NCBI GenBank assembly: GCA_977017575.1
Contig: CDRNVI010000012.1
Span: forward strand, 558,001 to 622,000
From: Paramoeba atlantica
Lineage: Eukaryota; Protista; Discosea
DNA: 64,000 nt
Direction of reading: 5' to 3'
Part shown: piece after piece, positions 1,183-63,300 of the stretch
Position numbering within the stretch: position 1 is the stretch's first letter
Layout: every line of letters starts with the position of its first letter
Translations under genes and position numbers: made by a program
Notes under the pieces: generated by a model
The model's database searches: none
The model's input: only the letters and a program-made list of their open reading frames with translations
What the model was told of the DNA's origin: nothing

Positions 1183-1640
1183 CAGGGGGGTGCACGAAAA
1201 TATGGGGGGGTCAAAATTCGTATAACTCGACCAATTTCGGAAAGCAGCACCGCATTCGAGAGCTCTCGCAGAGTTACGTGTCATGTGATAATGCGTTTCC
1301 AGCATTTTTAGATTCTTTAAAAAATTAAAAAAAGTATGATTTTTCAAAGTTCAGAATTCTGCTGCTTTTTGAAAAAAATGCTTTTTTTCTGAATTTATCC
1401 ACTTTTTTGATCCTAATACACTACTATGCCCCAGAAAAGGTCGTATTCGAATAATAGAAAGGTGCAGAAACGGAGTAGATTTTGTTATTCGCCTCGTGGG
1501 CAACTTAAAGCATCTCACAGGATACTTTTGGTTAAAAAATTTGAGGAAATTGATTCTTTTTCGGCTGTCGCCAAGACGTTTAGGTGACTTAAAACTTTTA
1601 GGAATCGATTTTGGAAGAGTAATGTTGCAGGGCCCGCGGA
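1183..1640 (+). pseudogene. Degenerate 5' fragment of the DD32E Tc1 family
   Basis: TA|CAGGGGGGTG terminus with the family's TTCGAGAGCTCTCG palindrome. ATG at 1426 gives MPQKRSYS...SHRILLV, homologous to the N-terminus of ORF 16475-17596. Confidence 0.7.
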
Positions 1641-2686
1641 AACTTTTTAAAAGCGAAGAAAAGCTTTTTCAGATCGTTGAAAGCGCTTTAAAAGCGCTTT
1701 TCGAGCTTTTTTTAGCTTTCGAACTTTCGAGCACGTGTGTACACCTTTACCCTGAGGATGCACTTATGTAAATGAGCATGTAGTGTGTTCATCCGTGGAA
1801 TGCCGACTGAAAATGTGCGCCAGACTTACACTTGAAACGTTGTCGTAGAAATTTGGCCTAAAGCAGTACTCCCCCACTCATTAATAATTATAAACCTCCA
1901 AAACTTATTAAAAGGTTCGTTTATAGAAATTTAATGAGATCATAATTCTCAGCCTCACTTCTATAATTATAAACCTCAAATTCTTCATTTTTTATCTAGA
2001 AAGACACCTGTACCACATACTTTGCACTAAAAATTGTTTCCAAGTTTAAAGGAGTGTCTCGAAAATCAAGAATTTGAAGTCCGTAATAAGAAAAAATCAC
2101 TTATCGAATCTCATTAATAATTATAAACTAAATTTATAATTATAAACTAAAAACGTTTATAGATTATAATTATTAATGGACACTATGAAGATTTGGATGG
2201 CACTGGATGGCAGCGGATGGCACTGGATGGCACTGGATGACTAATTTTTGTGTATGTAATGGTTTACCCAAAACGAAAATTTGTGGGACGGTTTGCTCAC
2301 ATCTCAAGTGATGGTGAGGCAAGACTATATGCCAAGACTATATGTCAAGACTATATGCCAGACGATGCACGAGATACAAGTTGCAACCCAACAGCATGAC
2401 CGGTCGTAGGGGATCAGTGATGCTAGAAGCCAAAACGCATGAAAGCTGCTCATCCAAGTATCATTGAAAATTAATAGTATAGTAATAAACCTAACCCCCA
2501 AATTACAAGTACGATACGACAATAAATAATGTAAATACAATTTGCAATAATAATTAATGAAATGAAAATGAAGTGGATTATTAGTTAAAGCACCCCTCTT
2601 CCCTCTGGTTCTCCCTCACACGTACTACAAATTAAAAGCATATAGTAAGTTTAATATAATTAAAAGCAAATAGTATTAAAAGCATA

Positions 2687-2820
2687 CTGTGACCCCCCCC
2701 CTTTAATATGCTCCCCCTTCCCTCCCCCCCTTAATATGCATAAATTTTGGTGAAAGGGGACTTTTTTTCCTCCTAAAAAAAATTGATTTTTTTTCACGGT
2801 GGTAGCGCAGACAAAATTTC
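2687..2820. repeat. Left terminus of a DNA transposon; inverted copy of 487-619
   Basis: TA|CTGTGACCCCCCCCC start; reverse complement of 487-619. Confidence 0.7.
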
Positions 2821-3901
2821 TGTACTTTCCAAGCGAGTGATTAAGCATCATATTTTTGCTACTTACACGACTCCGCTCTATCATTTTTCTTTGCACAGAC
2901 TGTAAAATGTATGTCCTATCACTTTTTGTAGTTGGGAACCTTGGATGGCGTGATAATAGAAGCATGTACCGTACGATGTGAATTAAGGAGTTCTTGTGCC
3001 GGTGACAATTACAAAGAAAAGTCCTCTGTAAGTAGGGGGGGACACATTAAATATTCTCGAAAGGGGTTGGGAAGTAGGCCTCGATGACAAGGATGCATAG
3101 AAGTAGCCGCCATCGGTTGTGTGCCGTAGTCGATTGAATCTAAACGCGGCGTCCCTGTCTCGGAACGGTCTTCTGTCTCTAAGGAAAGAGCACTACGGGG
3201 CTTCTGAGACGATGTCCTCACTTCGACGTCTACGATTCCCTGATTCCCATCCGTAGGTGGGATTCGCTTAGGTGGAACAGGACTGGTCGATGGGCATCTC
3301 TATTGCTTCCAACGGAGTTTTTGCTTCAAATTATTCTTGGAGAGTTGCCGGTTGATTTCTGCATCCCACTTTTTCAGTTGAGTTTTAGAATGCACTGTGT
3401 ATAATTCACCAAAGGTTTCTCTCATTCATTGTTGTATTGTTGCCATAGCTTTGTGGTGCGTTTGAGACATAGTTCGCCATTTCGAAACAGCCTTATCCTT
3501 CACAACGAAAGGAACATCGCGACGTACGTTTCTCCGAGAACCTAAAACGACTCTAGAACGTTTGGCAACTTTTACTTTACGGGCCCCACTGCAATCAACC
3601 AAACCTTCCTCGTTATCACTGCTTTCATCAGTGGTAGAACTTTCCTCTGTTTCGCTTAATTCCCCATCAGGGGTTTCGAGGCTAACATTTTCTATATCAC
3701 TACCATGTTCTTCATCAGAATGGTATTGGATGTTCTAATGGGTGTTCATAGGCACATTCTAAGGGGTGTTCTAGGCGCTTCCAGTGAACTTCCATGGAGT
3801 TCGGACTTGGTAATTTGAGGACAAATTACCGCCGCAAGTACCACTCCGGCTCGCGGGCTCCGCCCGAGTACGGGGACGCCGATCTCTCCTAGGTCACTTC
3901 A

Positions 3902-4024
<123 letters not shown>

Positions 4025-4026
4025 CT

Positions 4027-4048
4027 GATACAGTTTCTGTACCTTGTT
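4027..4048 (+). other. Truncated spliced-leader exon
   Basis: GATACAGTTTCTGTACCTTGTT matches the 3' part of the copy at 37732-37769. It contains the euglenozoan SL core ACAGTTTCTGTAC. Confidence 0.75.
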
Positions 4049-4102
4049 TTTTTTTTTTTTGTACTACGTTGTACAGAATGTTATGCGTCTGTAGCCCCTA
4101 AT

Positions 4103-7100
4103 ATGGCAAGCTCAGACGTTCCTGCACAAGCATCACGCGGGGAACGACATGTGAGGGTTAAAAGCACCACGTGTACAACATGGACTACGTTCGCTAGCAT
4201 TAAATCAGCCGCTGTCAGCCCACTTGTCAGACAGTTTTATCCGAATCCTGAGACCGGTCGCACCGCCCTCACTCACGCGCTTGATAAAAGTAAACCTGCA
4301 CGCGGACTCGTGGTCGAGTCAGCCGAACTATCTAGATATAGAATTCGACACCGAGGAACGAATGAAGAATGGAACTACTACTCAAGCATTGCAGATCTAC
4401 ATACCAAGCTGTTCTCTTCCACGTATTCGCGTGTCGACTCTCTCAGCCGCGCTCTCGCCAGCTACTTTAAGGGATCCCCTCCAAAGCATCTCCTTCCCTT
4501 TGACATTGAACCATTGCACGCAGAGCGCCAAGGAACTGCACCACCACGAATTGCCACGGAATGCAAGCACAGCTGCAAGAGCAAGGAAACGTGCTCCCAC
4601 TTATGTTGTAAGCGGCACCTGGAATCATACGAAACTATCAACTCGGACGCGGAGCCCCAAACTGTGCCCAACAACACTACAAACAACGAGTGTAAGCACC
4701 TCTGTGGCGACAAACGTACCTGTAAGCATGTATGCTGCAAACGGCACTTGACCTCTGAGCGACTAGAATTCCAAACTGCGGATCCACCGGACCCAACCGA
4801 ATCCTCGCAGCATCATGAAAATCAGCTTCCGCAAGCACCTATCGGCGGAGTCGAAGAATGCAAGCATATCTGCACGAACAAACGATCATGCAAGCACTTG
4901 TGCTGCAAACGACACCTCACGACCACCTTCGCCGGCCCCGACGCTAGTTCTACAATGCTAACCACGGAAACCACCAACTCCCACATTGAAATTAGTTCGA
5001 CCCAAGTCCCTCCTCCCCTCAGCGAGCCGGAGCCCCCCTCAGACCCTACACCTATCACGTCTCCTCCAGTGGGAAACCCCCTCCCGACGGTAAGTACGGC
5101 CTACGGCACACTTCATTCAATCGGCAGTACTATCGGAACCTATATTGTACATGCCGCCCGCCAAGTGCTAGCTGGAAGTGCTACCCCAGAACAGGAATCG
5201 CACCCCATCGGAGCCCATGTACACAACCCATGCAGCAACGTCAGGGAGGACAATATCGAGAAAGGACCACAACACCGCGCATCCGCCGGCCCGGTCTCGC
5301 CTCAAGCGGCCTCGCCCACAGAGTGTAAGCACATCTGCACGGACAAGCACACGTGCCGGCACCAATGCTGCAAACGACACCTGGGTATCGCTTCATCCGA
5401 ACAGCAGCGTAACACTACTGAAACTCAGCCCACAGGTGACGCGCTCCCCGCACCGCTTTCCCCACCGCGCGGAAGCACTGCAGCACCCATACCTACCCTT
5501 CCTGATACGTCCCTACCTACCCTTCCCAGCCCACGACTCACAGAAGCCTCGGAACCAAGCGACGTGCAAGATGCAACCGCTCCCTGCAAGCACGACTGTC
5601 TAAATAGATTCTCATGCAGGCACCACTGCTGTAAACGAAACCTCCCCCATCCAACGTCCCGTGCTAGCCTCTTAGCAGCCGCAGCAGGGATTGCTGGTTG
5701 CCGCATGAATCTGAAGTTAAACTACAATGTGTGGGAAGTAGCCGATACACATGCCGAAGAGCTATTCCTTCGCTTTCGTATACAAGACGTTCAAAGCAAA
5801 TCTGAGGCCGAAGAAAATGTGACTCTACTCACAGCTTGCATCGTCGTAAGTTGCGCCCTTGCCGCCACGCGAGAACACGGGGATCACGGAATTACACTTC
5901 GACAACGAGGTCCCCCGCAGTGCCTCCGTCGACGCCCTATTGCTGCCGAAAAGGCGCGTAGGTTGCTTGAAACCGAGGCGTACCTCCTCCGCAAAAAAGC
6001 GAGGCACGCAACTTCGTCTGACCGTACCAGGCTTCTAAGGGAAGCGAAGAGCGCCCAATCAGCAGCAATCAACTTCTCGAAGGAAGCGGAAAGGGTACAA
6101 ACCCGACGAGCGCAACAAGAAGCCAACCATCGTTTCGCGAGAAATGCCTGGGCGGCTGCCACCGAAGTGCTGGAGAGACCGACGGGGGAAAGCACAGTGC
6201 ACAAGTACCCGACATGCGCGGATACTGATGTCCTCGAGCATTACAAGCGCGAACTCAAAGCGTCACAATCGAAGGCAATGTTACCAGACCGTTCGCACCT
6301 CCCTGGGAATTCTATGGCGGAACAACATTACTGGTCTGATATCACACCAGGCGATGTGACACGGGCTGCCATGAAAAAGAAATCTTGTTCAGCCCCCGGG
6401 GAGGACGCCATTCAGAATACTGCACTAAAGAAACTCAAATCTCTTCACCCCCACATCGCACACTGCTTCAATAACCTCCTTCGATGGAGAGTGTGTCCCA
6501 CACAGTGGAAATCGGCCATCGTAAAATTACTCCACAAGGGTGGGGATGATAGCAATCCCAAAAACTGGCGCCCAATCGCCCTTACGTCATGCCTAGGCAA
6601 GCTGTTCCATTCCATTATCGCCTCAAGCATCACCGAGCACGTAACGAAGGAATATATTCTGGACACCAGTGTCCAAAAGGGGTTCCTACCGAAGCTAGCA
6701 GGATGCATAGAACATACAGCTGCCATTAGCCAATGCGTTCGCCACGCTAAACAGAACAGAAAGCCCCTATGCATGGTTCAGTACGACCTAACGAATGCCT
6801 TTGGATCGGTGCCACACGAGATTATCCTTGCTGCGCTCAAGTGGGCGAGGATAGACTCAGTCATTGTTGAATACGTCGAGCAAATGTACCAAGGATCATC
6901 TCTTCGCTTGAAACTCGCAGGTGGTCTCTCTGAACCCATCCCGGCCCAAAGAGGAGTCCTACAGGGTGACACTCTCTCGCCAATCCTGTTCAATATGGTC
7001 ATGGAAGTTGTCTACCGCTACATCCGCAAAGCCCGTCCGACACTAGGATTCTCCACTGGACGTGACCTACACTTCTGCAAAGCGTTTGCAGACGACCTCA

Positions 7101-50260: not shown

Positions 50261-51313
50261 ATGGTACTACCGTCTACGAGGGATTTAGTTGCGCGTACTC
50301 GGAGCAGCTCTCCGTTAGAAAGTCTACATCGTGAGGAATCGCAACGCGAAGAACAACGTGAAGATGGAGGTCGAAAAAACCCGTTGAATGTCAATCGTAT
50401 GCGTGCCATTTGTACTCGAATTCGGGAGTTCCTTATGTTGATGCCGGGAGAAAGTCCCGCTCTTGGCATTACCGCGGAGTGGAAACGGAAAGACTCGCCT
50501 AATTCAGAGATTCGTAAGACGACGGCAAAAGTTCGCAAGGAAGGTTTGGACCTATGGGAAAATGAAGCAAGTAAGGAATATCCGTTTCCGCATCCTGACA
50601 TGAATTATTATGATATTGAAATTGATTCGGAAATTAACCAGGAACAAATGGAAGAGGAAGCCCAAGTGGAGAATGAGATTGGTGAGCACATGGACCCCAA
50701 TAATTTGGATCCGTACGAGCCCATCACTTTCGAGGCATGGATTATGTCGGCGGACAAATTCAAAGTGCGAGATTTGATACGGGAGTTGAAAGATGCGCCT
50801 GAATTCGGTTTACGCATAGATCAATTCTTTGTGGATCGAACCTTTATCAAACAACAAGAACGGAATTTTGAGAACCTTTTCGTAAAGTGGATCATCTACG
50901 CTCGATAAACCCCGAATTGGAACAAAGGCACATATCTGGAAATCGGTAAAGGTATCATACAACTCTTACGCGACTCATACTGGAAGGCACGAAGAATGGA
51001 TGTGGAAGCGGTGCACCAGAAAATGAGCAAAGATGAACGTCCTCAAGATAAATTTTACCAGCACATTGCAGAGCAGATGGAGGAGCGTAACAAGCAGTGG
51101 AACAAAAGTGTGTCTATGCGAGGACGGGGACGAGGATTTCGCGGTGGAATGACCAGTTATCGAGGGCGAAGCTACGCTCAGAATGAATTATTATGCTATC
51201 ATTGTCGTGAACCGGGGCATATGCAACGATTTTGTCCTGCATTGAAGAAAGAACAAGAGGATTTTCGTCGCAGGGTGACTGGCCCTGCCGAACAAGGCAG
51301 CAAAAGGTATTAG
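50261..51313 (+). pseudogene. gag: gag-like ORF with CCHC knuckle and one in-frame TAA at 50906
   Basis: ORFs 50261-50908 and 50996-51313 share a frame; CYHCREPGHMQRFC. Confidence 0.8.
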
Positions 51314-53595
51314 GAATACCACACCCAAACGGCCAGTATGAAATCTGCAAGAACATCGCGAGGAAACAAGAAACGTTTATTGAACCAGAAACCAATCAAT
51401 CTGCAAGTAACAAACAAGAGGAAGCCAGCAAGCACTTTCGAACGAATCTCGAAACATCGAAAGCTGGATGCACCATGTGTGAAATGCACGAAAGGCAGAC
51501 CGCTCTCTTCTATGAAATTGTATGGAGGTACTTTGAGCTTACAAACCAATTGGCATGCAAAGCAGGATTTGCTGAAGCACATGATAGGAATAAAAGAAAT
51601 TACACCTCAAATCAAATACGCCATGGATGCGATGTCCCAGACATGGACGAACGGCACATGGAACACAAGAAGCAGGCTATGGGAAAAATTGAGCACATTT
51701 TGCCGGTGGCGAAACATAGATGTCAATCCGATTCATGCTGTAGCGTTCTTAACACAGCTGCCGATAGCGTTCCAAACAAAGTTGACGTACGCCAGGAACT
51801 TACAAACATTGCTCAACCTCATGACAGCAAACACACTACCCCTAAAGCTATATTGCCGCGCACTACAAGCACAGGGAGCCGAAGAACCAATCCACCAAAT
51901 GAAGCCATTAACACCAGAGCTATTAAAACACACCAGAAGCCGCTTACCTCACCGAGAAAGTCTTGCGCTTCTGCTGTCGTGGAAAGCAGCGGCACGATGG
52001 TCCGAAACAGCGGCTCTGACAAGGGACAGATTTGTGGAGGTGAACAATCATCAAGTAGTCATACGGTGGGGGAGAATGACGAAAGCTTCACGATACAATC
52101 CTTACCGGCGGTCGATGTACACAGTTGTGACGGGACCCGGTACATCAGAGATAGCAAATTTTGTAAGGACCTTAAAGCGGCACCAACCCTTGACAGAAAC
52201 GACAGTAAGACAAATGGACCGTCTTTTAGTCCAAATACTGGGGCCAGGATACGGCACCCATTCAGTGAAACGCGGCGCAGTTACTCATCTGTTCAAAGAA
52301 GTGGCCAAGGGAGAAATACCGTTGGAAACGGTGCAAACGCTAGCCAATCATCAGGAAGTAAGCTCTCTACTCAGGTACAATGCGGATCCCATAACGACAG
52401 CGTTGGCCCTCGGAACACAACAAGCCACGCAGAAGCTGCCGACGCATTAGAGGAGGAGCAAGCATACCGCCAGTTTATGCGGGATATCCCGTATATCAAG
52501 ACCAAGTATACAATATTACGAACGAGAAGGTCTTCTAAAGTTGCAACTAAGGTTGACATGAAAATTCCTTTGCATGTAAAACATGGAATTCCACGTATGG
52601 ACGTGGATAAAGTATTTGACTTATTGAACAATGAGGCCAAAGAAAGGTATAATAAGTTGTGGAAGATGATATGCTCGACCGAGGGTTCTGTAAGCGTAGG
52701 CAGTCAAGGAATTCAGGACAAATCAGTTTCGACTATGTTTTTGTGCGACAGCGATGTGATGAGTTTGATAGAAACGGGCGTTGTGTCCAAGGTAACGCCG
52801 GAAGACCTTACATCACGACCGACCATTCAAATCATTTTACCATTTACTGTTATTGAAACCGATGAGCATGATACACTTGAACGTCGTCGATTTATTGCAT
52901 GGTGTAAGGAGGATAATGAACGATTAAAAGATTTGTACGTCCAGTATGTGCCGTTGCGACATGGATCATACTATCTACATCGGGCTAGTTACGAGTTTGG
53001 ACTAAAGAGAGATCTTGCGTGTGGCTACTATCAAATACGACTTCCCGAACATGCACGTGCCAAATTTAGGTTCTCAGATAAGGAAGGAGCGACATACGAA
53101 TTAAATGTATTGCCCATGGGCCACAGATGTGCCCCAGAACTAATGCACATGATCACAGCTGCTCTCGCAGGCGACCCCAATTACTGCAACAGAGAACAAA
53201 GCTTTACAACAAGTGCTTTGGATATATACATTGATGGATTTCGGTGTGCAGGGGATTACGATGCAGTCAAGAAGTTCGGAGATTTTGTCAATAAAAGGGC
53301 GGTTTTCATTGGGGCAAAATATAAGGATGCAGAAGAAGAACCTAAAAAACAATACGTCTTTAATGGCGTGCACTATGATCATCGTACTGCGAAAGTTTGT
53401 CTGGCGCCAAAAATTATTCATCGGTTATCAAAGGATATCTACTTTGGAATTTCGTATGGACAGTTGGAGTCATCTGTAGGAAGATTACTTCACGCATCAA
53501 TGGTTTTGGGGAAATCGATTCCGGAGCATCATTTTGCTTTGAAGTTAGTAAGAAGGCGCATTAACGCTTTAAACCGTGATCCAAAACTTTTGTAC
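51232..53595 (+). CDS. pol: pol of element 1, RT part; -1 frame overlapping the gag end and all of YR
   Basis: RDLACGYYQI, LPMGH..PELM, YIDG. The rest of track ORF 51232-54672 is element 2 gag fused in frame by the insertion. Confidence 0.8.
51338..52450 (+). CDS. Tyrosine recombinase, 370 aa
   Basis: WKAAARWSE (R), MTK (K), THSVKRGA (HxxR), LANH...LLRY (H, Y). Confidence 0.9.
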   Translation: MKSARTSRGNKKRLLNQKPINLQVTNKRKPASTFERISKHRKLDAPCVKCTKGRPLSSMKLYGGTLSLQTNWHAKQDLLKHMIGIKEITPQIKYAMDAMSQTWTNGTWNTRSRLWEKLSTFCRWRNIDVNPIHAVAFLTQLPIAFQTKLTYARNLQTLLNLMTANTLPLKLYCRALQAQGAEEPIHQMKPLTPELLKHTRSRLPHRESLALLLSWKAAARWSETAALTRDRFVEVNNHQVVIRWGRMTKASRYNPYRRSMYTVVTGPGTSEIANFVRTLKRHQPLTETTVRQMDRLLVQILGPGYGTHSVKRGAVTHLFKEVAKGEIPLETVQTLANHQEVSSLLRYNADPITTALALGTQQATQKLPTH

Positions 53596-53631
53596 CCTTC
53601 TTACTTTCTTTTACCCTTTTCAAATTGCGTT

Positions 53632-54672
53632 ATGACCAGCATTCTTAATACTGTTCGTCGCACGCTGTCGATGGGGAGGCCACAGAGTCCTATACGAGAA
53701 GATCCGGCATCTCCCAACCCTGTCGATCCGAGTCTGCAATACGGGGGACAACGTACGACGCTGAACCCGGAGCAAGTGGCGGCTTTGCTTAGGGGGGGAA
53801 CAGGCTCTGCAGCGATGTCTGACGAGGATAAGGCGGAATTCGCGCAAAAAGTCCGGACTTTGATCCTTAAGGGTTACGATGTGTCTGTAGAAGCCGTGTG
53901 GGGTCACCATGGGGATGCAGTGCGCGAAACTGTGATTGGCAACGTTCGTCTGAAATCCGACGATTCAGGAGGCATTGAAGCCGTTTGGAACGATGATCCC
54001 GGCATGGCATACGACTTTCCTTTTCCAGACATCGAATATTATTCGTTGGAAATTACCCGGGTGCGAGCAAAGATGCCTGGAGGGCGCAAAGCGGACGAAG
54101 AACCTAAGACTCCTAATGCGCCTATCACCGATCCGGCTCGTTTCACCGCAAACGATCCTCTAACATGGGGCCCGTGGCTAGAATCCGAGGATGAGTTACG
54201 CGTACGAGACCTTATTCGTGATTTACGCGTCCATCCTGAATTTGGTTTGTTACTGAACGCTCCTCCTATCCGTGAACGTCTATTTAAAATAGTCCAAGAG
54301 TGGATCCAAGCGGCACGAGTTTTTCCCCTATGGCGAGAGGAACATTTTCTCGAAATCGTACGCACAGCCATCGAAGAACTGCGAAACCACTATTGGGCCT
54401 CATCCGGAATTCAAGTCGAACGTGTACAATTAAAACTCCACAAGGATGATGACACTAAGGATGCGTACTCGAAGGCAGTTGCGGAGGAAAAGCTGCGCCA
54501 CATGAGTGTTTCAAAAATCGCCACTAATCGCCCGGCCTTTCTTTGCTATCGATGCCACAAGCCAGGTCACTTTCGCGCCAACTGCCCATTAAATCAATCT
54601 TCTACGCGTTCGACCCCGGGTTTTCGGGGCGGGGTGACGAGCGGCACAACAGGTGCAAAGAGGAGCCAATAG
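53632..54672 (+). CDS. gag: gag-like protein with CCHC knuckle (element 2)
   Basis: MTSILNTVRR...CYRCHKPGHFRANCP; near-identical copy at 62123. Start approximate. Confidence 0.8.
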   Translation: MTSILNTVRRTLSMGRPQSPIREDPASPNPVDPSLQYGGQRTTLNPEQVAALLRGGTGSAAMSDEDKAEFAQKVRTLILKGYDVSVEAVWGHHGDAVRETVIGNVRLKSDDSGGIEAVWNDDPGMAYDFPFPDIEYYSLEITRVRAKMPGGRKADEEPKTPNAPITDPARFTANDPLTWGPWLESEDELRVRDLIRDLRVHPEFGLLLNAPPIRERLFKIVQEWIQAARVFPLWREEHFLEIVRTAIEELRNHYWASSGIQVERVQLKLHKDDDTKDAYSKAVAEEKLRHMSVSKIATNRPAFLCYRCHKPGHFRANCPLNQSSTRSTPGFRGGVTSGTTGAKRSQ

Positions 54673-57449
54673 GCCAGGTTCCCCACCCCTTATATCGCTC
54701 GTGCCTGTCCGCTGAAGAAGCGGCGGGTGATTTATCCAGGTATATTCTGCAATTCATCACTGCACTCTGCAGGGAAGGTGCGTGCCTTCACGGCATGTCA
54801 CGGAACGGTACTGCATTCGCCACGGAATCCGGTGGCGGAATTAACGACAAAGTCAAATATCCCTCAAGCCAAACGCCAACGCCTGCAACCGCAAGCCAAA
54901 GAACCTCAAGAAATGCGTCCCGCGGGAGACAACACCAGGGAAACAAAATTGCGCTCAGTCCAGCAAAAACTAACATATACAATTCTAAATCTACCGCCTC
55001 TGAGTCCTATCGCACGTCAGATTCAAAGCGCAATCAATCCAATGTGGACAAATGCTACATGGCTAACGAGGGCGCGACTTTGGGAAAGACTGGGAAAGTT
55101 TTGTCTACAAAGCGGTTTTCCGCGAGATCCAGTACACGCCGTCCTTTTCTTAAATCAACTCGATCTCGCACCAGCAACACTGTTAAGCTACACCCGAAAT
55201 CTCCAGACGGTGTTTCAACTAAGCCAAAAGGATCCAATCCCACTCAAAATGTTCGCGAAAGCCCTACAAGCAAGGGGGGCTCTCGAGCCTACTCGTCAGA
55301 TGGAACCGATTACTCCATGGCAGCTGCGCCGGCTCAGGGAAAAATTGTCGTTAAGCGAAGGGATAGCCGCCTTGATTTGTTGGAAGGCTGCGGCCAGATG
55401 GACAGAGGTGGCCGAACTGACTCTGGAACGATTTGTGCGACATCAACCAAACGAAGTAATAATTTATTGGGGGAGGAATACAAAATCGACGCGTCTCAAC
55501 CCGTACCGGCTATCGATGTGCACAGCGATCCAAGGGGAAGGAACTCAGGAGATCGCAAATTACGTCCAATTCATGGGGGAAGGCCAACGCATAGCGAGTA
55601 CAACAGTTCGGGAGATGGACCGAAAGATGCAGAGGATTCTAGGTCCGGGATTTGGAACACATTCCCTGAAGCGCGGCGCGATAACTCACCTTTTCAGCGA
55701 GGTGGCGCACGGACACGTCGCTCTCTCCGACGTTCAAAACATAGCAAAGCATCAATGCATAAACTCCCTCTTGCGATACAACGGCAACCTTATTACGACG
55801 GCGAAAGCCCTCGGTACTCAGCGAGCTTCGGTTCTCCTCCCAATACAATGACTCAAAAGGATGTAAATCTTTGTTTTGATCAAATACCGCACGTTCGACG
55901 ATACAGCATTATTTGCGCGCGCCGTACATCCCGTCTTGCACGTACCGAAGATATGGACCTTCCCCTACACGTTAAAGTTGGAATACCCGTTATGGATGTA
56001 CAAAAAGTAAAGAATTGGATGAGCCCTGAAGCGCGCCGCCGGCTTGAAACGGTAATAGGTGAATTATTTAATACACGACTAGGAGCCCAACCAGAGCCTT
56101 CAACAAAAGGTAATCTTGTAAATGCCGACATCACGGGTTTACTTGAAGCCGGAGTGATAGAAAGAGTGGAGGAGGACGACATACGCCGGTATCCAACGCT
56201 GCAATACGTAATTCCATTCACGGTAGTCGAATCCGACGAGGAAGGCAACGATAGGCGCCGTTTCATATCATGGACCAAGGATGATAACTTGCGATTAAAA
56301 GACTACAAGTCAGACGTGCCTTTGTTGCATCCTTCTCGTTATCTCCATGAGGCTGCCGAAGAAGCGGGGGTGAAGCGCGATCTCCGATGTGGATTTTATC
56401 AAGTTCCAATTCCGCGCCAGGCTCGTGCCAAATTTCGCTTTCGAGATCTAAATGGCGTCTTACACCAGATGAAGGTTATGCCAATGGGGCACCGATGCGC
56501 CCCTGAAATTATGCACAAGATTACAGCTACACTAGCAGGCGATCTGGCGGTATGCAAACCCGAACTAGTTTCATGCATTGGATCTGTGGACGTCTATATA
56601 GACGGGATTCGTTTCGCAGGATCTCGAGAACAAGCTGATAAATTTGTGAAATTCGTGGATTCACGGTGTAAGGAAGTGGGAGGTTTGTTCAAGGAGGCTG
56701 GTTTTGACCCCTCCACTGAATATGTTTTTAACGGCGTCTTCTACAATCACGTAACCCATAAGGTCAACCTGGGGCCTAGGGTTATACGGAAAATGTCACG
56801 AGATCGGTTTCGTAATATTACGTACTCTCAATTGGAGACGGCGGTGGGGCGCCTCCTCTATGCAGCAGCGGTCTTGGGTCATATTATTCCAGACTATCAT
56901 TTCCCCTTAAAGATTGTTAGACGACGTATCAATGAGTTAAACCGATGCCCCGAACTCGCACATCAACCGGTTCCTCTTCCGACAGCCACCCGATCGATTC
57001 TCGCGAATTGGCGTGATATCATTTTGGTCAATGAGCCTATATCACCACCTCCGCATCCTGACGTTGTCCCGCATAAACACCGACTGTACACGGATGCGTC
57101 AGCTAAAGGATGGGGCGCGGTTCTTTACCGGGACGACGGACAAGTGATTATTGTTGGCGATAAATGGCAACCTGAGTTCAAATACGAAGTGAATCACGCT
57201 GAGGCGATGGCCGTTCGACTTGCGTTTGAAAAACTGACACACCACTTTCAAAAAGGAACCTGTGTTGATTTGTTTATTGACAACACCTCTTGCCAAGCAG
57301 CATTCAACCGCAAGATCGCGAAATCCGACAGTATTGCCGGAGAGCTCAAGCGTGTGTTGAAGACAAATCAGAACCTTGGCGTATGTATCATGGCACGTTA
57401 TGTGAGATCTGCCGAAAACCCAGCGGACCCTATCAGCCGCACCGGATAA
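54543..57449 (+). CDS. pol: pol (RT + RNase H) of element 2, -1 frame
   Basis: RDLRCGFYQV, MPMGH, YIDG. RNase H motifs LYTDAS, NHAEAMAV, FIDN, NPAD. Confidence 0.88.
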   Translation: MLSMPQARSLSRQLPIKSIFYAFDPGFSGRGDERHNRCKEEPIGQVPHPLYRSCLSAEEAAGDLSRYILQFITALCREGACLHGMSRNGTAFATESGGGINDKVKYPSSQTPTPATASQRTSRNASRGRQHQGNKIALSPAKTNIYNSKSTASESYRTSDSKRNQSNVDKCYMANEGATLGKTGKVLSTKRFSARSSTRRPFLKSTRSRTSNTVKLHPKSPDGVSTKPKGSNPTQNVRESPTSKGGSRAYSSDGTDYSMAAAPAQGKIVVKRRDSRLDLLEGCGQMDRGGRTDSGTICATSTKRSNNLLGEEYKIDASQPVPAIDVHSDPRGRNSGDRKLRPIHGGRPTHSEYNSSGDGPKDAEDSRSGIWNTFPEARRDNSPFQRGGARTRRSLRRSKHSKASMHKLPLAIQRQPYYDGESPRYSASFGSPPNTMTQKDVNLCFDQIPHVRRYSIICARRTSRLARTEDMDLPLHVKVGIPVMDVQKVKNWMSPEARRRLETVIGELFNTRLGAQPEPSTKGNLVNADITGLLEAGVIERVEEDDIRRYPTLQYVIPFTVVESDEEGNDRRRFISWTKDDNLRLKDYKSDVPLLHPSRYLHEAAEEAGVKRDLRCGFYQVPIPRQARAKFRFRDLNGVLHQMKVMPMGHRCAPEIMHKITATLAGDLAVCKPELVSCIGSVDVYIDGIRFAGSREQADKFVKFVDSRCKEVGGLFKEAGFDPSTEYVFNGVFYNHVTHKVNLGPRVIRKMSRDRFRNITYSQLETAVGRLLYAAAVLGHIIPDYHFPLKIVRRRINELNRCPELAHQPVPLPTATRSILANWRDIILVNEPISPPPHPDVVPHKHRLYTDASAKGWGAVLYRDDGQVIIVGDKWQPEFKYEVNHAEAMAVRLAFEKLTHHFQKGTCVDLFIDNTSCQAAFNRKIAKSDSIAGELKRVLKTNQNLGVCIMARYVRSAENPADPISRTG
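54727..55851 (+). CDS. Tyrosine recombinase, 374 aa (element 2)
   Basis: WKAAARWTE, NTK, THSLKRGA, IAKH...LLRY. Confidence 0.9.
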   Translation: MIYPGIFCNSSLHSAGKVRAFTACHGTVLHSPRNPVAELTTKSNIPQAKRQRLQPQAKEPQEMRPAGDNTRETKLRSVQQKLTYTILNLPPLSPIARQIQSAINPMWTNATWLTRARLWERLGKFCLQSGFPRDPVHAVLFLNQLDLAPATLLSYTRNLQTVFQLSQKDPIPLKMFAKALQARGALEPTRQMEPITPWQLRRLREKLSLSEGIAALICWKAAARWTEVAELTLERFVRHQPNEVIIYWGRNTKSTRLNPYRLSMCTAIQGEGTQEIANYVQFMGEGQRIASTTVREMDRKMQRILGPGFGTHSLKRGAITHLFSEVAHGHVALSDVQNIAKHQCINSLLRYNGNLITTAKALGTQRASVLLPIQ

Positions 57450-60332: not shown

Positions 60333-63300
60333 ATGTCTTACGAAGGAATCGTGGGGCATAAGGTTGGAAGTAAATTCGATGGTTTCCTACCGCCGCATCC
60401 GAACGTTCGCGTCTATGAAATATTTTGGCTAAAACATACAAAACAACCTGAGATCGGGATGCACCAAGAACTGCGAACCAGGACACATACAGAAGAAGAT
60501 TTGGATAAGAACCCCATGCCCACCATGCGGATAATTCCTGCGGAATTTGTGCCATGCGTAATTGCAATTTATCGTGACATCGTCCGCGACTACGCCGATT
60601 CATCATATGAACAACGAAATCGAATTTGGAATTGCATTCTATCTGCTATGAAGCACTCCCTGGCTACCATCCGCGACTTGAGCGGGAAAAAAAGGCGACG
60701 ACGTCCTTTACCTGATTCTGTTGCAGGAGAAGAAAATAACGGGAAAAGCACGAGCGACACTGATGATACCAGAGCGATGAAAAAGGCAACAAAATTGGCT
60801 CTTGAAGGATGTGTGTCCAAAGCCACCCGTGTACTGGACCAGGAAGTCAAACAGTCATCACTAAGAGATGAAGAGAAGATGGAACAACTCCAACGATTGC
60901 ACCCGCAAATTCCGGTGACGTTCGGGCTCCCTGCGGATGCACCGAAGATAGCTTGCATTGATCCTCACGAATTACGAGAAGCCGGGAAAAGACTAGCCAA
61001 AGGATCCTCACCTGGCCCAATCGGAACAACCGACACCATCGTCCGATTACTCTTAGATGATGAAATATGCTGTACGAGTCTGTGTCACATGATGTGCGAC
61101 CTCATTAACGGGTTGCTCTCCAAAGAAGTTATGAAACGTCTGCGCAGAGCACGGTTAATAGCACTTCCGAAAAAGGCAGACGCAGTGCGTCCTATCGCGA
61201 TGGGGGAAATATTTCTGAAACTAGCTGGACTTGTGTTGCTATTGCGAAATGAGCACTCGTTTGAAAGTTTGTTTCTTCCGATGCAGCACGGCGTTATGAG
61301 TAAAGCAGGATGTGAGACCATTGTGCACGAGCTCAACCGTAGATACCTTGAGGGCAACGCTATCCTTACCTTAGATTTAAAGAATGCTTTCAATAGCCCT
61401 TCAAGAGATGAGATTGCGAAGGCTGTATTTGCGTTCCATACTCTCCGTCCGTTCCAACGGTTCTTCACTGCAGAGTATGGTGATGCGTCAGAACTGCTCT
61501 TCTACGGAAAAAATGGTGAGCTTTTCGGGACTGTCAACAGTGCGGCTGGCGTGAGGCAAGGTTCTCCCTTATCGTCCTTATATTTCTGCACGCTCCTCCA
61601 ACCCATTCTCGAGTCAATAGCGCAGGATTTCCCGACGATTCGCATATATGCATATGTGGACGATATTAACTTAACATCCCCAGATACGAATCTTCTCCAA
61701 CAGGCGTACCATAAGTTGAAGGAAATGCTTGCCAAGCAAAACATTATTATGGCACCAGAGAAATGCATTTGGTTTGGAGGCATCCATAAGCTAGAAAATC
61801 CCGATGGTCTGCGTTCAGAAGGAATTAAAACCGAACACGAAGCAATAAAACTACTAGGGGCATATGTAGGAGAAACAGGCAAAGCAAGTGCACTCCTTCT
61901 AGAATAGAAGTATATTTTTAGAAATTTAGGATGATTGACATAATGGACCTTCGGGGCACATAATATTTATATTATGATTTGTTTTTACAGATTGTGGCCC
62001 CGAAAGGGGCACCCGTTGTTAGATGTAATGAGATTTATAATTTAGTAGTACTCGGGATGAAGTAATATATATTGTTTTTGTGTATAGCGACACTCCTTCT
62101 TTTACCCTTTTCAAATTGCGTTATGACCAGCATTCTTAATACTGTTCGTCGCACGCTGTCGATGGGGAGGCCACAGAGTCCTATACGAGAAGATCCGGCA
62201 TCTCCCAACCCTGTCGATCCGAGTCTGCAATACGGGGGACAACGTACGACGCTGAACCCGGAGCAAGTGGCGGCTTTGCTTAGGGGGGGAACAGGCTCTG
62301 CAGCGATGTCTGACGAGGATAAGGCGGAATTCGCGCAAAAAGTCCGGACTTTGATCCTTAAGGGTTACGATGTGTCTGTAGAAGCCGTGTGGGGTCACCA
62401 TGGGGATGCAGTGCGCGAAACTGTGATTGGCAACGTTCGTCTGAAATCCGACGATTCAGGAGGCATTGAAGCCGTTTGGAACGATGATCCCGGCATGGCA
62501 TACGACTTTCCTTTTCCAGACATCGAATATTATTCGTTGGAAATTACCCGGGTGCGAGCAAAGATGCCTGGAGGGCGCAAAGCGGACGAAGAACCTAAGA
62601 CTCCTAATGCGCCTATCACCGATCCGGCTCGTTTCACCGCAAACGATCCTCTAACATGGGGCCCGTGGCTAGAATCCGAGGATGAGTTACGCGTACGAGA
62701 CCTTATCCGTGATTTACGCGTCCATCCTGAATTTGGTTTGTTACTGAACGCTCCTCCTATCCGTGAACGTCTATTTAAAATAGTCCAAGAGTGGATCCAA
62801 GCGGCACGAGTTTTTCCCCTATGGCGAGAGGAACATTTTCTCGAAATCGTACGCACAGCCATCGAAGAACTGCGAAACCACTATTGGGCCTCATCCGGAA
62901 TTCAAGTCGAACGTGTACAATTAAAACTCCACAAGGATGATGACACTAAGGATGCGTACTCGAAGGCAGTTGCGGAGGAAAACCTGCGCCACATGAGTGT
63001 TTCAAAAATCGCCACTAATCCCCCGGCCTTTCTTTGCTATTGATGCCACAAGCCAGGTCACTTTCGCGCCAACTGCCCATTAAATCAATCTTCTACTCGT
63101 TCGACCTCGGGTTTTCGGGGCGGGGTGACGAGCGGCACAACAGGTGCAATTGCGCCCACCCACCAACCCCCAACCATTTCGCAGAGTTGGTGGACGGGAT
63201 GCCCGTTCGTAAGTTTGAGGAGTTGTTGACTGGGTTTCTGTGATTGTTTTTATTATATTGGCCAGGTACCTTGATAATTCGTCAGATAGATATAGTTTAT

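What the first reader, a model, noticed from the sequence alone, without database searches (positions are those of the whole stretch)
51259..51340. Candidate -1 frameshift signal (slippery heptamer + multi-stem pseudoknot) at the end of VIPER-like gag, element 1
Seen: G_GAT_TTT in the gag frame (51259-51265), 15 codons before the gag TAG. After a 7-nt spacer come GGGTG (pairs CACCC 51322-51326) and ACTGGCC (pairs GGCCAGT 51331-51337) in crossing A-B-A'-B' order. They enclose the hairpins CTGCC/GGCAG and GGTATT/AATACC, the latter carrying the TAG. pol is in the -1 frame and is already open here. Known: G_GAU_UUU is a functional slippery site in a dianthovirus. Inference: Gag-Pol is made by -1 frameshifting. 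I am not aware of this being described for YR retrotransposons.
Basis: partly seen in the sequence, partly recalled or inferred. Interest (0 to 1): 0.9.

Follow-up and report, generated by a model that had tools for sequence, protein, structure and literature searches.

The report
Gag-to-RT frameshift signal, VIPER-like retrotransposon
A short, highly conserved RNA signal at the end of the gag gene of a tyrosine-recombinase retrotransposon almost certainly makes ribosomes slip back one base to produce the reverse transcriptase as a Gag fusion, a familiar retroviral trick for which I found no published description in this class of element.

Summary
G_GAT_TTT lies in the gag frame at 51259-65. 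A 7-nt spacer follows, then two crossing helices (51273-77/51322-26 and 51278-84/51331-37) around two hairpins; the second hairpin holds the gag TAG.

The support is comparative, not thermodynamic. The 45.7-Mb genome holds over 100 copies in subfamilies whose recombinases are only about 50% identical to element 1. Every intact junction examined shows:
- gag, one stop, then the recombinase (YR) in the same frame;
- RT/RH in the -1 frame, opening 3-240 nt before the heptamer;
- G_GAT_TTT or canonical G_GGT_TTT, followed by CG, 49-61 nt before the stop.

The -1 frame has no stop across 360-395 YR codons; synonymous shuffles give 10-13. It has no conserved ATG. All four helices keep pairing through compensatory changes.

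T. cruzi VIPER has the same layout, with A_AAA_AAC and a 10-bp hairpin.

Most likely this is programmed -1 frameshifting giving Gag-linker-RT/RH. No protein or RNA data exist. YR has no conserved ATG either, so stop readthrough (Gag-YR) in the same cassette is plausible but unproven.

The scan reached the same reading elsewhere in this genome (s1-369833).

The parts
50261..51313 (+). gag of element 1 (CCHC zinc knuckle near the C-terminus). This copy is decayed: it has an in-frame stop at 50906-50908. The gag stop TAG is at 51311-51313.
   Evidence: PF00098 zf-CCHC
51211..51258 (+). Start of the -1 frame (RT/RH frame), open from just after TGA 51208-10. It overlaps the end of gag and has no ATG here.
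51259..51265 (+). Slippery heptamer G_GAT_TTT in the gag frame, followed by an invariant CG
51266..51272 (+). 7-nt spacer
51273..51277 (+). Helix A, 5' arm GGGTG
51278..51284 (+). Helix B, 5' arm ACTGGCC (the core CTGGCC is conserved)
51285..51300 (+). Hairpin 1: CTGCC / loop GAACAA / GGCAG
51306..51320 (+). Hairpin 2: GGTATT / AGG / AATACC. It carries the gag TAG (51311-13) at its apex.
51322..51326 (+). Helix A, 3' arm CACCC
51331..51337 (+). Helix B, 3' arm GGCCAGT. It crosses helix A, giving a pseudoknot topology. The conserved block ends here.
51314..52450 (+). Tyrosine recombinase ORF in the gag frame, directly after the TAG. Its first ATG is at 51338. The -1 frame overlaps it completely.
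   Evidence: (PF00589)
52520..53720 (+). RT domain in the -1 frame (approximate limits). RNase H is missing in this copy, and the frame runs on into the gag of element 2.
54618..54702 (+). The same cassette in diverged element 2: G_GGT_TTT 54618-24; A 54631-36 / 54684-89; B 54637-43 / 54696-702; hairpin 1 54644-56; hairpin 2 54662-82 with TAG 54670-72 in its loop.

Best explanation
The 79-nt block 51259-51337 is a programmed -1 ribosomal frameshift cassette of a VIPER-like tyrosine-recombinase retrotransposon.

Most ribosomes translating gag go on to TAG 51311 and release Gag. A fraction pause with tRNA-Asp and tRNA-Phe on GAU_UUU (GGU_UUU in other subfamilies), because a structured RNA 6-7 nt downstream resists unwinding. 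These ribosomes slip back one base and continue in the -1 frame. That frame first runs through a poorly conserved, hydrophilic linker of about 400 residues laid over the whole recombinase gene. It then runs into RT and RNase H, so the product is Gag-linker-RT/RH.

The stimulator is a branched structure. Helix A closes a domain that holds two hairpins, the second presenting the gag stop. The strand just 3' of helix A's 5' arm pairs with sequence beyond the domain (helix B), which makes a pseudoknot.

Shown: the anatomy, conservation, covariation and frame statistics. Inferred: the slippage itself, its efficiency, and whether A and B coexist.
For: 1. **Architecture is conserved in every intact subfamily**, although the recombinases are only 50-58% identical to element 1. 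The layout is gag, one stop, YR in the same frame, and RT/RH in the -1 frame.
2. **The -1 frame is kept open.** It has 0 stops over 360-395 YR codons, against 17-36 in the +1 frame. Synonymous-codon shuffles give a mean of 10-13 stops, and 0 of 2000 reach zero.
3. **There is no conserved ATG in the -1 frame.** The frame opens only 3-12 nt before the heptamer in some subfamilies.
4. **The heptamer is conserved.** G_GAT_TTT or canonical G_GGT_TTT, plus CG, is in phase in all 22 distinct intact junctions with an unmutated site.
5. **The conserved DNA block coincides exactly with heptamer to helix B 3' arm**.
6. **The helices covary.**
   - Helix A: GGGTG/CACCC, GGGCG/CGCCC, GGACG/CGTCC, with a G-U intermediate.
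   - Helix B: CTGGCC/GGCCAG, CTGGCA/TGCCAG, ACGAGCG/CGCTCGT. Three double changes separate elements 1 and 2.
   - Hairpins 1 and 2 are re-predicted from different sequences in 15 of 17 distinct inner segments, with the stop at the apex of hairpin 2.
   - 85.3% of pair cells are paired, against 74.5% in shuffles (0/500) and 37-46% with slid partners. The covariation score is 0.303 against 0.151. Cognate halves beat swapped halves, with 0 of 20000 permutations as good.
7. **A covariance model built from one clade alone found the other clades** at E of 1e-4 to 1e-6, and 140 sites in the genome.
8. **Relatives show the same plan with other heptamers.**
   - T. cruzi VIPER has A_AAA_AAC 34 nt before the stop, then a 10-bp hairpin with TGA in its loop (-37.4 kcal/mol, z = -4.8).
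   - A Logan contig has A_AAA_AAC.
   - A JGI metagenome contig has A_AAA_AAT plus a G-run/C-run stem.
9. **G_GAU_UUU is a proven shift site** in PEMV2 (PMC4737148).
10. **The sequence is not an assembly artefact.** Contigs assembled separately (Logan) from a public run of the same organism reproduce 50907-51928 without any difference. That run may be the sample the genome was assembled from.
Against: - No frameshift protein, ribosome profiling or RNA data exist. No RNA run holds the stretch.
- Nested folding energy is not significantly better than shuffles in most subfamilies (z from -2.4 to +1.6). The case for structure therefore rests on covariation among related repeats, where shuffle controls overstate significance.
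- The alignment used was fitted to a model and is out of register for helix A in one clade.
- Helix B in the third clade is rich in G-U pairs and has an alternative partner.
- With no nucleotide between the 5' arms of A and B, the first pair of B probably has to open for both helices to coexist.
- G_GAT_TTT is not a canonical X_XXY_YYZ heptamer.
- Element 1 itself is a defective copy: it has an in-frame stop in gag and has lost RNase H.
Confidence: 0.8

Rival explanations
1. The conserved structure mainly serves stop-codon readthrough, giving a Gag-recombinase fusion, or serves readthrough as well as frameshifting. Under this reading the cassette sets three outcomes: Gag, Gag-YR and Gag-linker-RT/RH. 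The confidence given is for readthrough alone, without frameshifting.
For: - gag and YR are in one frame, separated by a single stop, in all intact subfamilies.
- The first ATG in the YR frame lies anywhere from codon 1 to codon 99 after the stop. In several subfamilies it lies inside sequence homologous to the YR N-terminal region of other subfamilies.
- The stop always sits in the apical part of hairpin 2, including in T. cruzi.
- Stop contexts include TGA-C and TAG-G.
- The same in-frame layout follows from the published T. cruzi coordinates (PMC5146736).
Against: - Readthrough alone cannot explain the stop-free -1 frame, the in-phase slippery heptamer, or the 6-7 nt spacing.
- The partners of the downstream arms lie upstream of the stop, so they would already be unwound when the stop is in the A site. 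This differs from the MuLV-type arrangement.
- All three stop codons are used.
- No direct data exist.
Confidence: 0.1
2. RT/RH is translated on its own, from an internal or alternative start or a separately processed mRNA. The conserved structured block is then a cis-acting replication element, for packaging, dimerisation, priming, or a recombinase site in the DNA.
For: [quoted passage not shown]
- In T. cruzi the annotated ORF3 starts at an ATG inside the gag overlap.
- Retroelement RNAs do carry structured cis elements.
Against: - Separate initiation gives no reason to keep 1.1 kb of upstream -1 frame free of stops in every subfamily.
- ATG positions are not conserved.
- The block starts exactly at an in-phase slippery heptamer with canonical spacing.
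- Distant relatives swap in other canonical heptamers at the same place.
Confidence: 0.06
3. There is no RNA function. The block is conserved because the gag C-terminal peptide (DFRxRVxGxA) and the overlapping frames constrain it, and the complementarities are chance in G+C-rich sequence.
For: - The gag C-terminal peptide is moderately conserved.
- Folding energies are mostly not exceptional.
- The copies are related, which inflates shuffle statistics.
Against: - Changes in gag codons are matched by complementary changes beyond the gag stop, in a different coding context.
- Swapped and slid controls are much worse.
- Hairpins keep their shape with unrelated stem sequences.
- The surrounding coding DNA is far less conserved than this block.
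Confidence: 0.04

Closest known systems
Retroviral and LTR-retrotransposon gag-pol -1 frameshift signals (HIV-1, MMTV, SRV-1 type; from general knowledge)
   Same: A slippery heptamer near the end of gag, a 5-9 nt spacer and a downstream hairpin or pseudoknot. pol lies in the -1 frame without a start of its own, and the product is a Gag-Pol fusion made at a set ratio.
   Different: - The element belongs to the tyrosine-recombinase (DIRS) order and has no protease or DDE integrase.
- After the shift the ribosome must cross a complete second gene (YR), which is coded in the gag frame behind the gag stop.
- The stimulator is branched and holds the gag stop in a hairpin loop.
VIPER of Trypanosoma cruzi (Lorenzi 2006; Ludwig and Krieger 2016, PMC5146736; Ribeiro 2019, PMC6681497)
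   Same: - Order gag, YR, RT/RH.
- YR directly behind the gag stop in the same frame, and RT/RH in the -1 frame overlapping the gag end and all of YR. This follows from the published coordinates 169-1509, 1510-2517 and 1386-4214, and I confirmed it on L074.
- RT/RH is about 32% identical.
- CCHC knuckle in gag.
   Different: - T. cruzi uses A_AAA_AAC and a simple 10-bp hairpin. This genome uses G_GAU_UUU or G_GGU_UUU and a two-helix crossing structure.
- The papers I could read describe overlapping genes and alternative starts, not frameshifting.
G_GAU_UUU shift sites of plant RNA viruses (umbravirus PEMV2, PMC4737148 and PMC5009743; dianthovirus RCNMV from my own knowledge)
   Same: The heptamer is identical, and it is experimentally active in eukaryotic ribosomes.
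   Different: These are RNA viruses. Their stimulators are hairpins with long-distance interactions, and in PEMV2 a stop lies 3 nt after the site. Here the stop is 15 codons on.
Three-stemmed coronavirus frameshift pseudoknot (from general knowledge)
   Same: A pseudoknot with an extra internal stem-loop downstream of a slippery heptamer.
   Different: Here two hairpins sit between the 5' arm of helix B and the 3' arm of helix A (the junction loop), not between the two 3' arms. The sequences are unrelated.
MuLV-type gag-pol stop readthrough (from general knowledge)
   Same: A single in-frame stop separates gag from a downstream enzyme, with structured RNA nearby.
   Different: In MuLV the pseudoknot lies wholly downstream of the stop. 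Here the stop is inside the structure, and readthrough is only inferred.

Membership tests
Programmed -1 ribosomal frameshift signal | A slippery heptamer in the zero frame that allows the P- and A-site tRNAs to re-pair in the -1 frame | tested here: met
   G_GGT_TTT (canonical X_XXY_YYZ) or G_GAT_TTT (a known functional variant, PMC4737148) is in phase in all 22 distinct intact junctions with an unmutated site. Relatives have A_AAA_AAC or A_AAA_AAT.
Programmed -1 ribosomal frameshift signal | A spacer of about 5-9 nt, then a stable downstream RNA structure | tested here: met
   The spacer is 6-7 nt. Four helices are supported by compensatory changes. Stability alone is not significant.
Programmed -1 ribosomal frameshift signal | A downstream ORF in the -1 frame that overlaps the zero-frame ORF and lacks its own initiation | tested here: met
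   The -1 frame opens 3-240 nt before the heptamer, has no conserved ATG, and has 0 stops over the next 360-395 codons and on into RT/RH.
Programmed -1 ribosomal frameshift signal | A transframe protein is produced at a measurable rate | not testable with these tools
   No RNA or protein data exist. No RNA run holds the stretch.
H-type (crossing) RNA pseudoknot | Two helices in the order A-B-A'-B', each supported on its own | tested here: met
   Helix A has double changes at two positions. Helix B has three pairs with double changes and 88% of cells paired. Cross-clade swaps lose 8-9 kcal/mol in B.
H-type (crossing) RNA pseudoknot | Both helices form at the same time in one molecule | not testable with these tools
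   ViennaRNA folds take either A or B as the closing helix. The two could also be alternative conformers. Probing or a solved structure is needed.
VIPER-like YR retrotransposon (order DIRS) | gag-like ORF, tyrosine recombinase and RT/RNase H, in the order gag-YR-RT/RH | tested here: met
   Pfam matches: zf-CCHC, Phage_integrase, RVT_1, RT_RNaseH. The order comes from the ORF maps. The nearest named relatives are T. cruzi VIPER proteins and a Diplonema protein.
VIPER-like YR retrotransposon (order DIRS) | Split direct repeats (A1 ... B1 A2 B2) at the element ends | not tested
   I did not map the element termini.
Programmed stop-codon readthrough | An in-frame ORF behind the stop that lacks its own start, plus a stimulatory context or structure 3' of the stop | tested here: inconclusive
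   The in-frame YR with no conserved ATG is met. No known readthrough context is conserved, and the partners of the 3' arms lie upstream of the stop.

The most novel reading that the evidence does not exclude
One cassette of about 80 nt governs three translational outcomes at the end of gag:
- termination, giving Gag;
- a -1 frameshift, giving Gag-linker-RT/RH, which is read across a recombinase gene that is dual-coded over its whole length;
- readthrough of the stop held in the hairpin loop, giving Gag-YR.

This double recoding would be the general expression strategy of VIPER-type elements across Euglenozoa, including T. cruzi.
Probability: 0.35. Interest if true: 0.8.

Novelty: new member of a known kind. 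Interest (0 to 1): 0.6.

Why it matters
**How these elements make their proteins.** How tyrosine-recombinase retrotransposons set the ratio of structural to enzymatic proteins has not been worked out. The VIPER literature I could read speaks of overlapping genes and alternative starts. A conserved heptamer-plus-structure cassette explains three things: the gene layout, why RT/RH has no start codon, and why the recombinase gene carries a stop-free second frame.

**A natural mutational series.** This genome offers more than 100 copies in about ten subfamilies. That gives a ready series for a branched frameshift pseudoknot.

**A test in a workable organism.** The same logic in T. cruzi VIPER (A_AAA_AAC plus a 10-bp hairpin) makes the idea testable in an organism with proteomic and ribosome-profiling resources. 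In my literature searches I found no case of programmed frameshifting reported for a nuclear kinetoplastid element.

**Annotation.** The finding would also correct database names, since VIPER ORF3 products are widely labelled 'TOR kinase 1' or 'rab1'.

Tried and rejected
- **Thermodynamic significance.** Nested MFE z-scores for ten cassettes are mostly unremarkable. I did not use stability as evidence.
- **MAFFT alignment of all clades (A1).** It misaligned the 3' half of clades II and III.
- **Covariance-model alignment (A3).** It leaves helix A's 3' arm 2-3 columns out of register in one clade and misplaces helix B's 3' arm in clade III. The counts are therefore conservative for A and B. I supplemented them with duplex searches per sequence, using swapped-partner controls. 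The simple best-match script picked a wrong register for helix B in three rows. For those rows one search is the better guide.
- **RNA evidence.** No run on record as RNA holds the stretch. The one possible RNA run covers only 161 nt of gag. Nothing can be said about expression or about indels in transcripts.
- **Transcriptional slippage or assembly error at TTTT.** I rejected this. Contigs assembled separately (Logan) from a public run of the same organism match exactly, and the run is only 4 nt long.
- **T. cruzi locus L069 and Diplonema locus L068.** These are broken or 5'-truncated copies and are not informative for the junction.
- **Loci L071, L072 and L076.** These are more distant families, or copies with a different gag frame relation. 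I did not resolve them.
- **Reassigned stop codons.** I rejected this, because TAG, TGA and TAA all occur as the gag stop.
Full report
**What is at the coordinates.**
- G_GAT_TTT lies at 51259-65 in the gag frame, with 15 codons between it and TAG 51311-13.
- A 7-nt spacer follows.
- GGGTG (51273-77) is complementary to CACCC (51322-26).
- The adjacent ACTGGCC (51278-84) is complementary to GGCCAGT (51331-37).
- The order is A-B-A'-B', which crosses.
- Between them lie hairpin 1 (CTGCC/GGCAG) and hairpin 2 (GGTATT/AATACC). The TAG sits at the apex of hairpin 2.

**The surrounding genes.** The upstream ORF is a gag with a CCHC knuckle.

The gene directly behind the TAG is not pol. It is a tyrosine recombinase (YR; Pfam Phage_integrase, with the HxxR and catalytic Tyr motifs), and it is in the gag frame.

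The -1 frame is open from 51211. It runs for about 400 codons over the entire YR gene before the RT domain appears.

A second, diverged element follows in tandem with the same layout. Its gag stop is at 54670-72, its YR is in the gag frame, and its RT/RH lies in the -1 frame from 54543.

Element 1 is itself a slightly decayed copy. It has an in-frame stop in gag at 50906-08. Its RT frame runs into the gag of element 2 without an RNase H domain.

**How common it is.** The window lies in a 45.7-Mb assembly. That assembly holds at least 111 scored YR matches out of 504 candidates. It also holds 140 matches to a covariance model of the cassette.

I examined 50 loci, which fall into about ten subfamilies. 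Their YR proteins are only 50-58% identical to element 1.

In every copy with intact gag and RT frames the layout is the same:
- a gag of 360-450 codons;
- a single stop (TAG, TGA or TAA);
- YR in the same frame;
- the -1 frame open from shortly before the gag stop to the end of the locus.

**Evidence that the -1 frame is translated from gag.**
- Across the 360-395 YR codons the -1 frame has no stop in any intact subfamily. The +1 frame has 17-36.
- Shuffling synonymous codons within YR gives 10-13 stops in the -1 frame on average. Zero stops never occurred in 2000 shuffles per sequence.
- The -1 translation is poorly conserved: 24.5% mean identity, against 47.2% for YR. It is hydrophilic, rich in Ser, Gly and Arg, with 18-22% hydrophobic residues. 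It therefore looks like a linker that only has to stay open.
- The -1 frame has no conserved ATG. The first one lies anywhere from 72 nt before to 798 nt after the heptamer.
- In some subfamilies the frame opens only 3, 9 or 12 nt upstream of the heptamer. In the L029 subfamily the shift must therefore happen within about 52 nt, and that stretch contains the heptamer.

**The slip site.** All 22 distinct intact junctions with an unmutated site carry G_GAT_TTT or the canonical G_GGT_TTT, always in the gag phase. CG always follows, and the site lies 49-61 nt before the stop. Two decayed copies read GAATTTT (L020 and L030).

G_GAU_UUU is an experimentally active -1 site in Pea enation mosaic virus 2 (PMC4737148; also cited in PMC5009743).

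**The RNA structure.** Stability alone is not convincing. Nested folds give z-scores from -2.4 to +1.6 against dinucleotide shuffles. The folding program takes either A or B as the closing helix, because it cannot draw both. The evidence is comparative.

- BLASTN between subfamilies aligns only query 259-339, which is window 51258-51338. That is the heptamer through the 3' arm of helix B. The flanking coding DNA no longer matches.
- Helix A occurs as GGGTG/CACCC, GGGCG/CGCCC and GGACG/CGTCC, with a G-U intermediate in one subfamily. It is extended to 6-7 bp in others.
- Helix B occurs as CTGGCC/GGCCAG, CTGGCA/TGCCAG and ACGAGCG/CGCTCGT. The last differs from element 1 by three double, compensatory changes.
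- The segment between B and A' folds on its own into two hairpins with different stem sequences in 15 of 17 distinct inner segments. The gag stop lies at or next to the apical loop of the second hairpin.
- A covariance model built from one clade, without helix B, still found the other two clades at E of 1e-4 to 1e-6.
- On that admittedly imperfect alignment, 85.3% of pair cells are standard pairs. Column shuffles give 74.5% (0 of 500 as high), and partners slid by 1-3 columns give 37-46%. Eleven of 21 pairs show changes on both sides. The covariation score is 0.303 against 0.151.
- Pairing each 5' half with the 3' halves of other copies is worse in every one of 20000 permutations. Across clades, helix B falls from about -13 to about -4 kcal/mol.

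These copies are related, so the shuffle figures overstate significance. The distinct compensatory events are the stronger argument.

**Geometry (inference).** The two 5' arms abut. The first pair of B is weak or mismatched in most subfamilies (A-U, G-U or U-U). If it stays open, one nucleotide bridges to a 6-bp helix B. The 4-7 nt between the 3' arms spans the 5-7 bp helix A. That is within classical pseudoknot limits. The two hairpins sit in the junction loop.

Whether A and B coexist or alternate cannot be decided here.

**Relatives.** The nearest named RT/RH relatives are a Diplonema papillatum protein and T. cruzi VIPER proteins, both at about 32% identity.

- **T. cruzi.** An intact VIPER copy (L074) has gag at 1646-3124, YR at 3125-4141 in the same frame, and RT/RH in the -1 frame from 2764. 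A canonical A_AAA_AAC lies in phase 34 nt before the stop. A 10-bp stem (GGGGCTGCCG/CGGCAGCCCC) with the TGA in its loop follows, at -37.4 kcal/mol and z = -4.8.
- **Logan contig.** A contig from another sample has the same layout with A_AAA_AAC.
- **JGI metagenome contig.** It has A_AAA_AAT followed by a G-run/C-run stem.

The plan is therefore older than this genome, and the heptamer and stimulator have been exchanged along the way.

**Literature.** Ludwig and Krieger 2016 (PMC5146736) give the T. cruzi consensus coordinates: ORF1 169-1509, YR 1510-2517, RT/RH 1386-4214. These imply the same frames. The paper speaks of overlapping genes and alternative start sites.

Ribeiro et al. 2019 (PMC6681497) use 'frameshift' only for mutations. 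The DIRS overview (PMC3266345) even says Viper elements usually lack ORF overlaps. The large recoding review (PMC5009743) mentions neither DIRS nor tyrosine recombinase in the 300,000 characters held.

Searches combining ribosomal frameshifting with DIRS, VIPER or T. cruzi returned nothing. I could not read Lorenzi et al. 2006, so a passing suggestion there cannot be excluded.

**What else the cassette may do.** YR also lacks a conserved start. The first ATG in its frame lies at codon 1 to 99 after the gag stop, and in several subfamilies it lies inside conserved YR sequence. Together with the invariant in-frame, single-stop arrangement, this makes a Gag-YR readthrough product plausible. It is not shown, and no known readthrough context is conserved.

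**Data limits.** No RNA run holds the stretch. Logan contigs of a public run of the same organism reproduce 50907-51928 exactly, so the frames are not an assembly error. That run may be the sample the assembly came from.

**Verdict.** This is a real, strongly conserved -1 frameshift cassette of VIPER-like elements. The mechanism is known; the element class is one in which I found no description of it. The same conclusion was reached by this scan on another piece of the genome (s1-369833). That is not independent evidence.

Noticed in passing
window 63106-63177: A third, truncated cassette copy. The 5' half (G_GGT_TTT, spacer, helices A and B 5' arms, hairpin 1) is identical to element 2. After that the sequence diverges, and the covariance-model match is only E = 0.3.
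   Followed up: partly
G000 contig C18, 36329-44755 (outside the window): Five cassette matches with identical scores are spaced about 2087 bp apart, ahead of a YR-bearing copy. This suggests a tandem array of a short, possibly non-autonomous derivative that keeps the frameshift cassette.
   Followed up: no
window 50906-50908 and about 53720-53800: Element 1 is defective. It has an in-frame stop in gag, and its RT frame passes straight into the gag of element 2 with no RNase H domain. Element 2 therefore replaces the 3' end of element 1.
   Followed up: partly
window 54709-54729, and equivalent places in L023, L059, L062: Beyond helix B's 3' arm several subfamilies have a further hairpin (CCGC/GCGG in element 2) followed by a second GGGTG. 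That motif could pair with helix A's 3' arm once the ribosome has opened helix A. This would be a possible alternative fold behind the stop codon.
   Followed up: no
P0026-P0095 (T. cruzi and other trypanosomatid proteins): VIPER ORF3 (RT/RH) products are widely named 'target of rapamycin (TOR) kinase 1', 'rab1 small GTP-binding protein' or 'trans-sialidase' in NCBI and UniRef. These look like propagated misannotations.
   Followed up: no
L071 and L072 (ENA assembly that shares contigs with window proteins), L076: These are more distant YR families (RT 34-36% identical). They keep RT in the -1 frame over YR, but the upstream gag-like ORF is in a different frame relation or does not overlap. 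They may be broken copies, or they may use a different expression strategy.
   Followed up: partly
L068 (Diplonema papillatum, GCA_030068145.1): A VIPER-like RT/RH ORF (961 aa annotated, 1281 codons stop to stop) is present in a diplonemid. This extends the lineage beyond kinetoplastids. The copy is 5'-truncated.
   Followed up: partly
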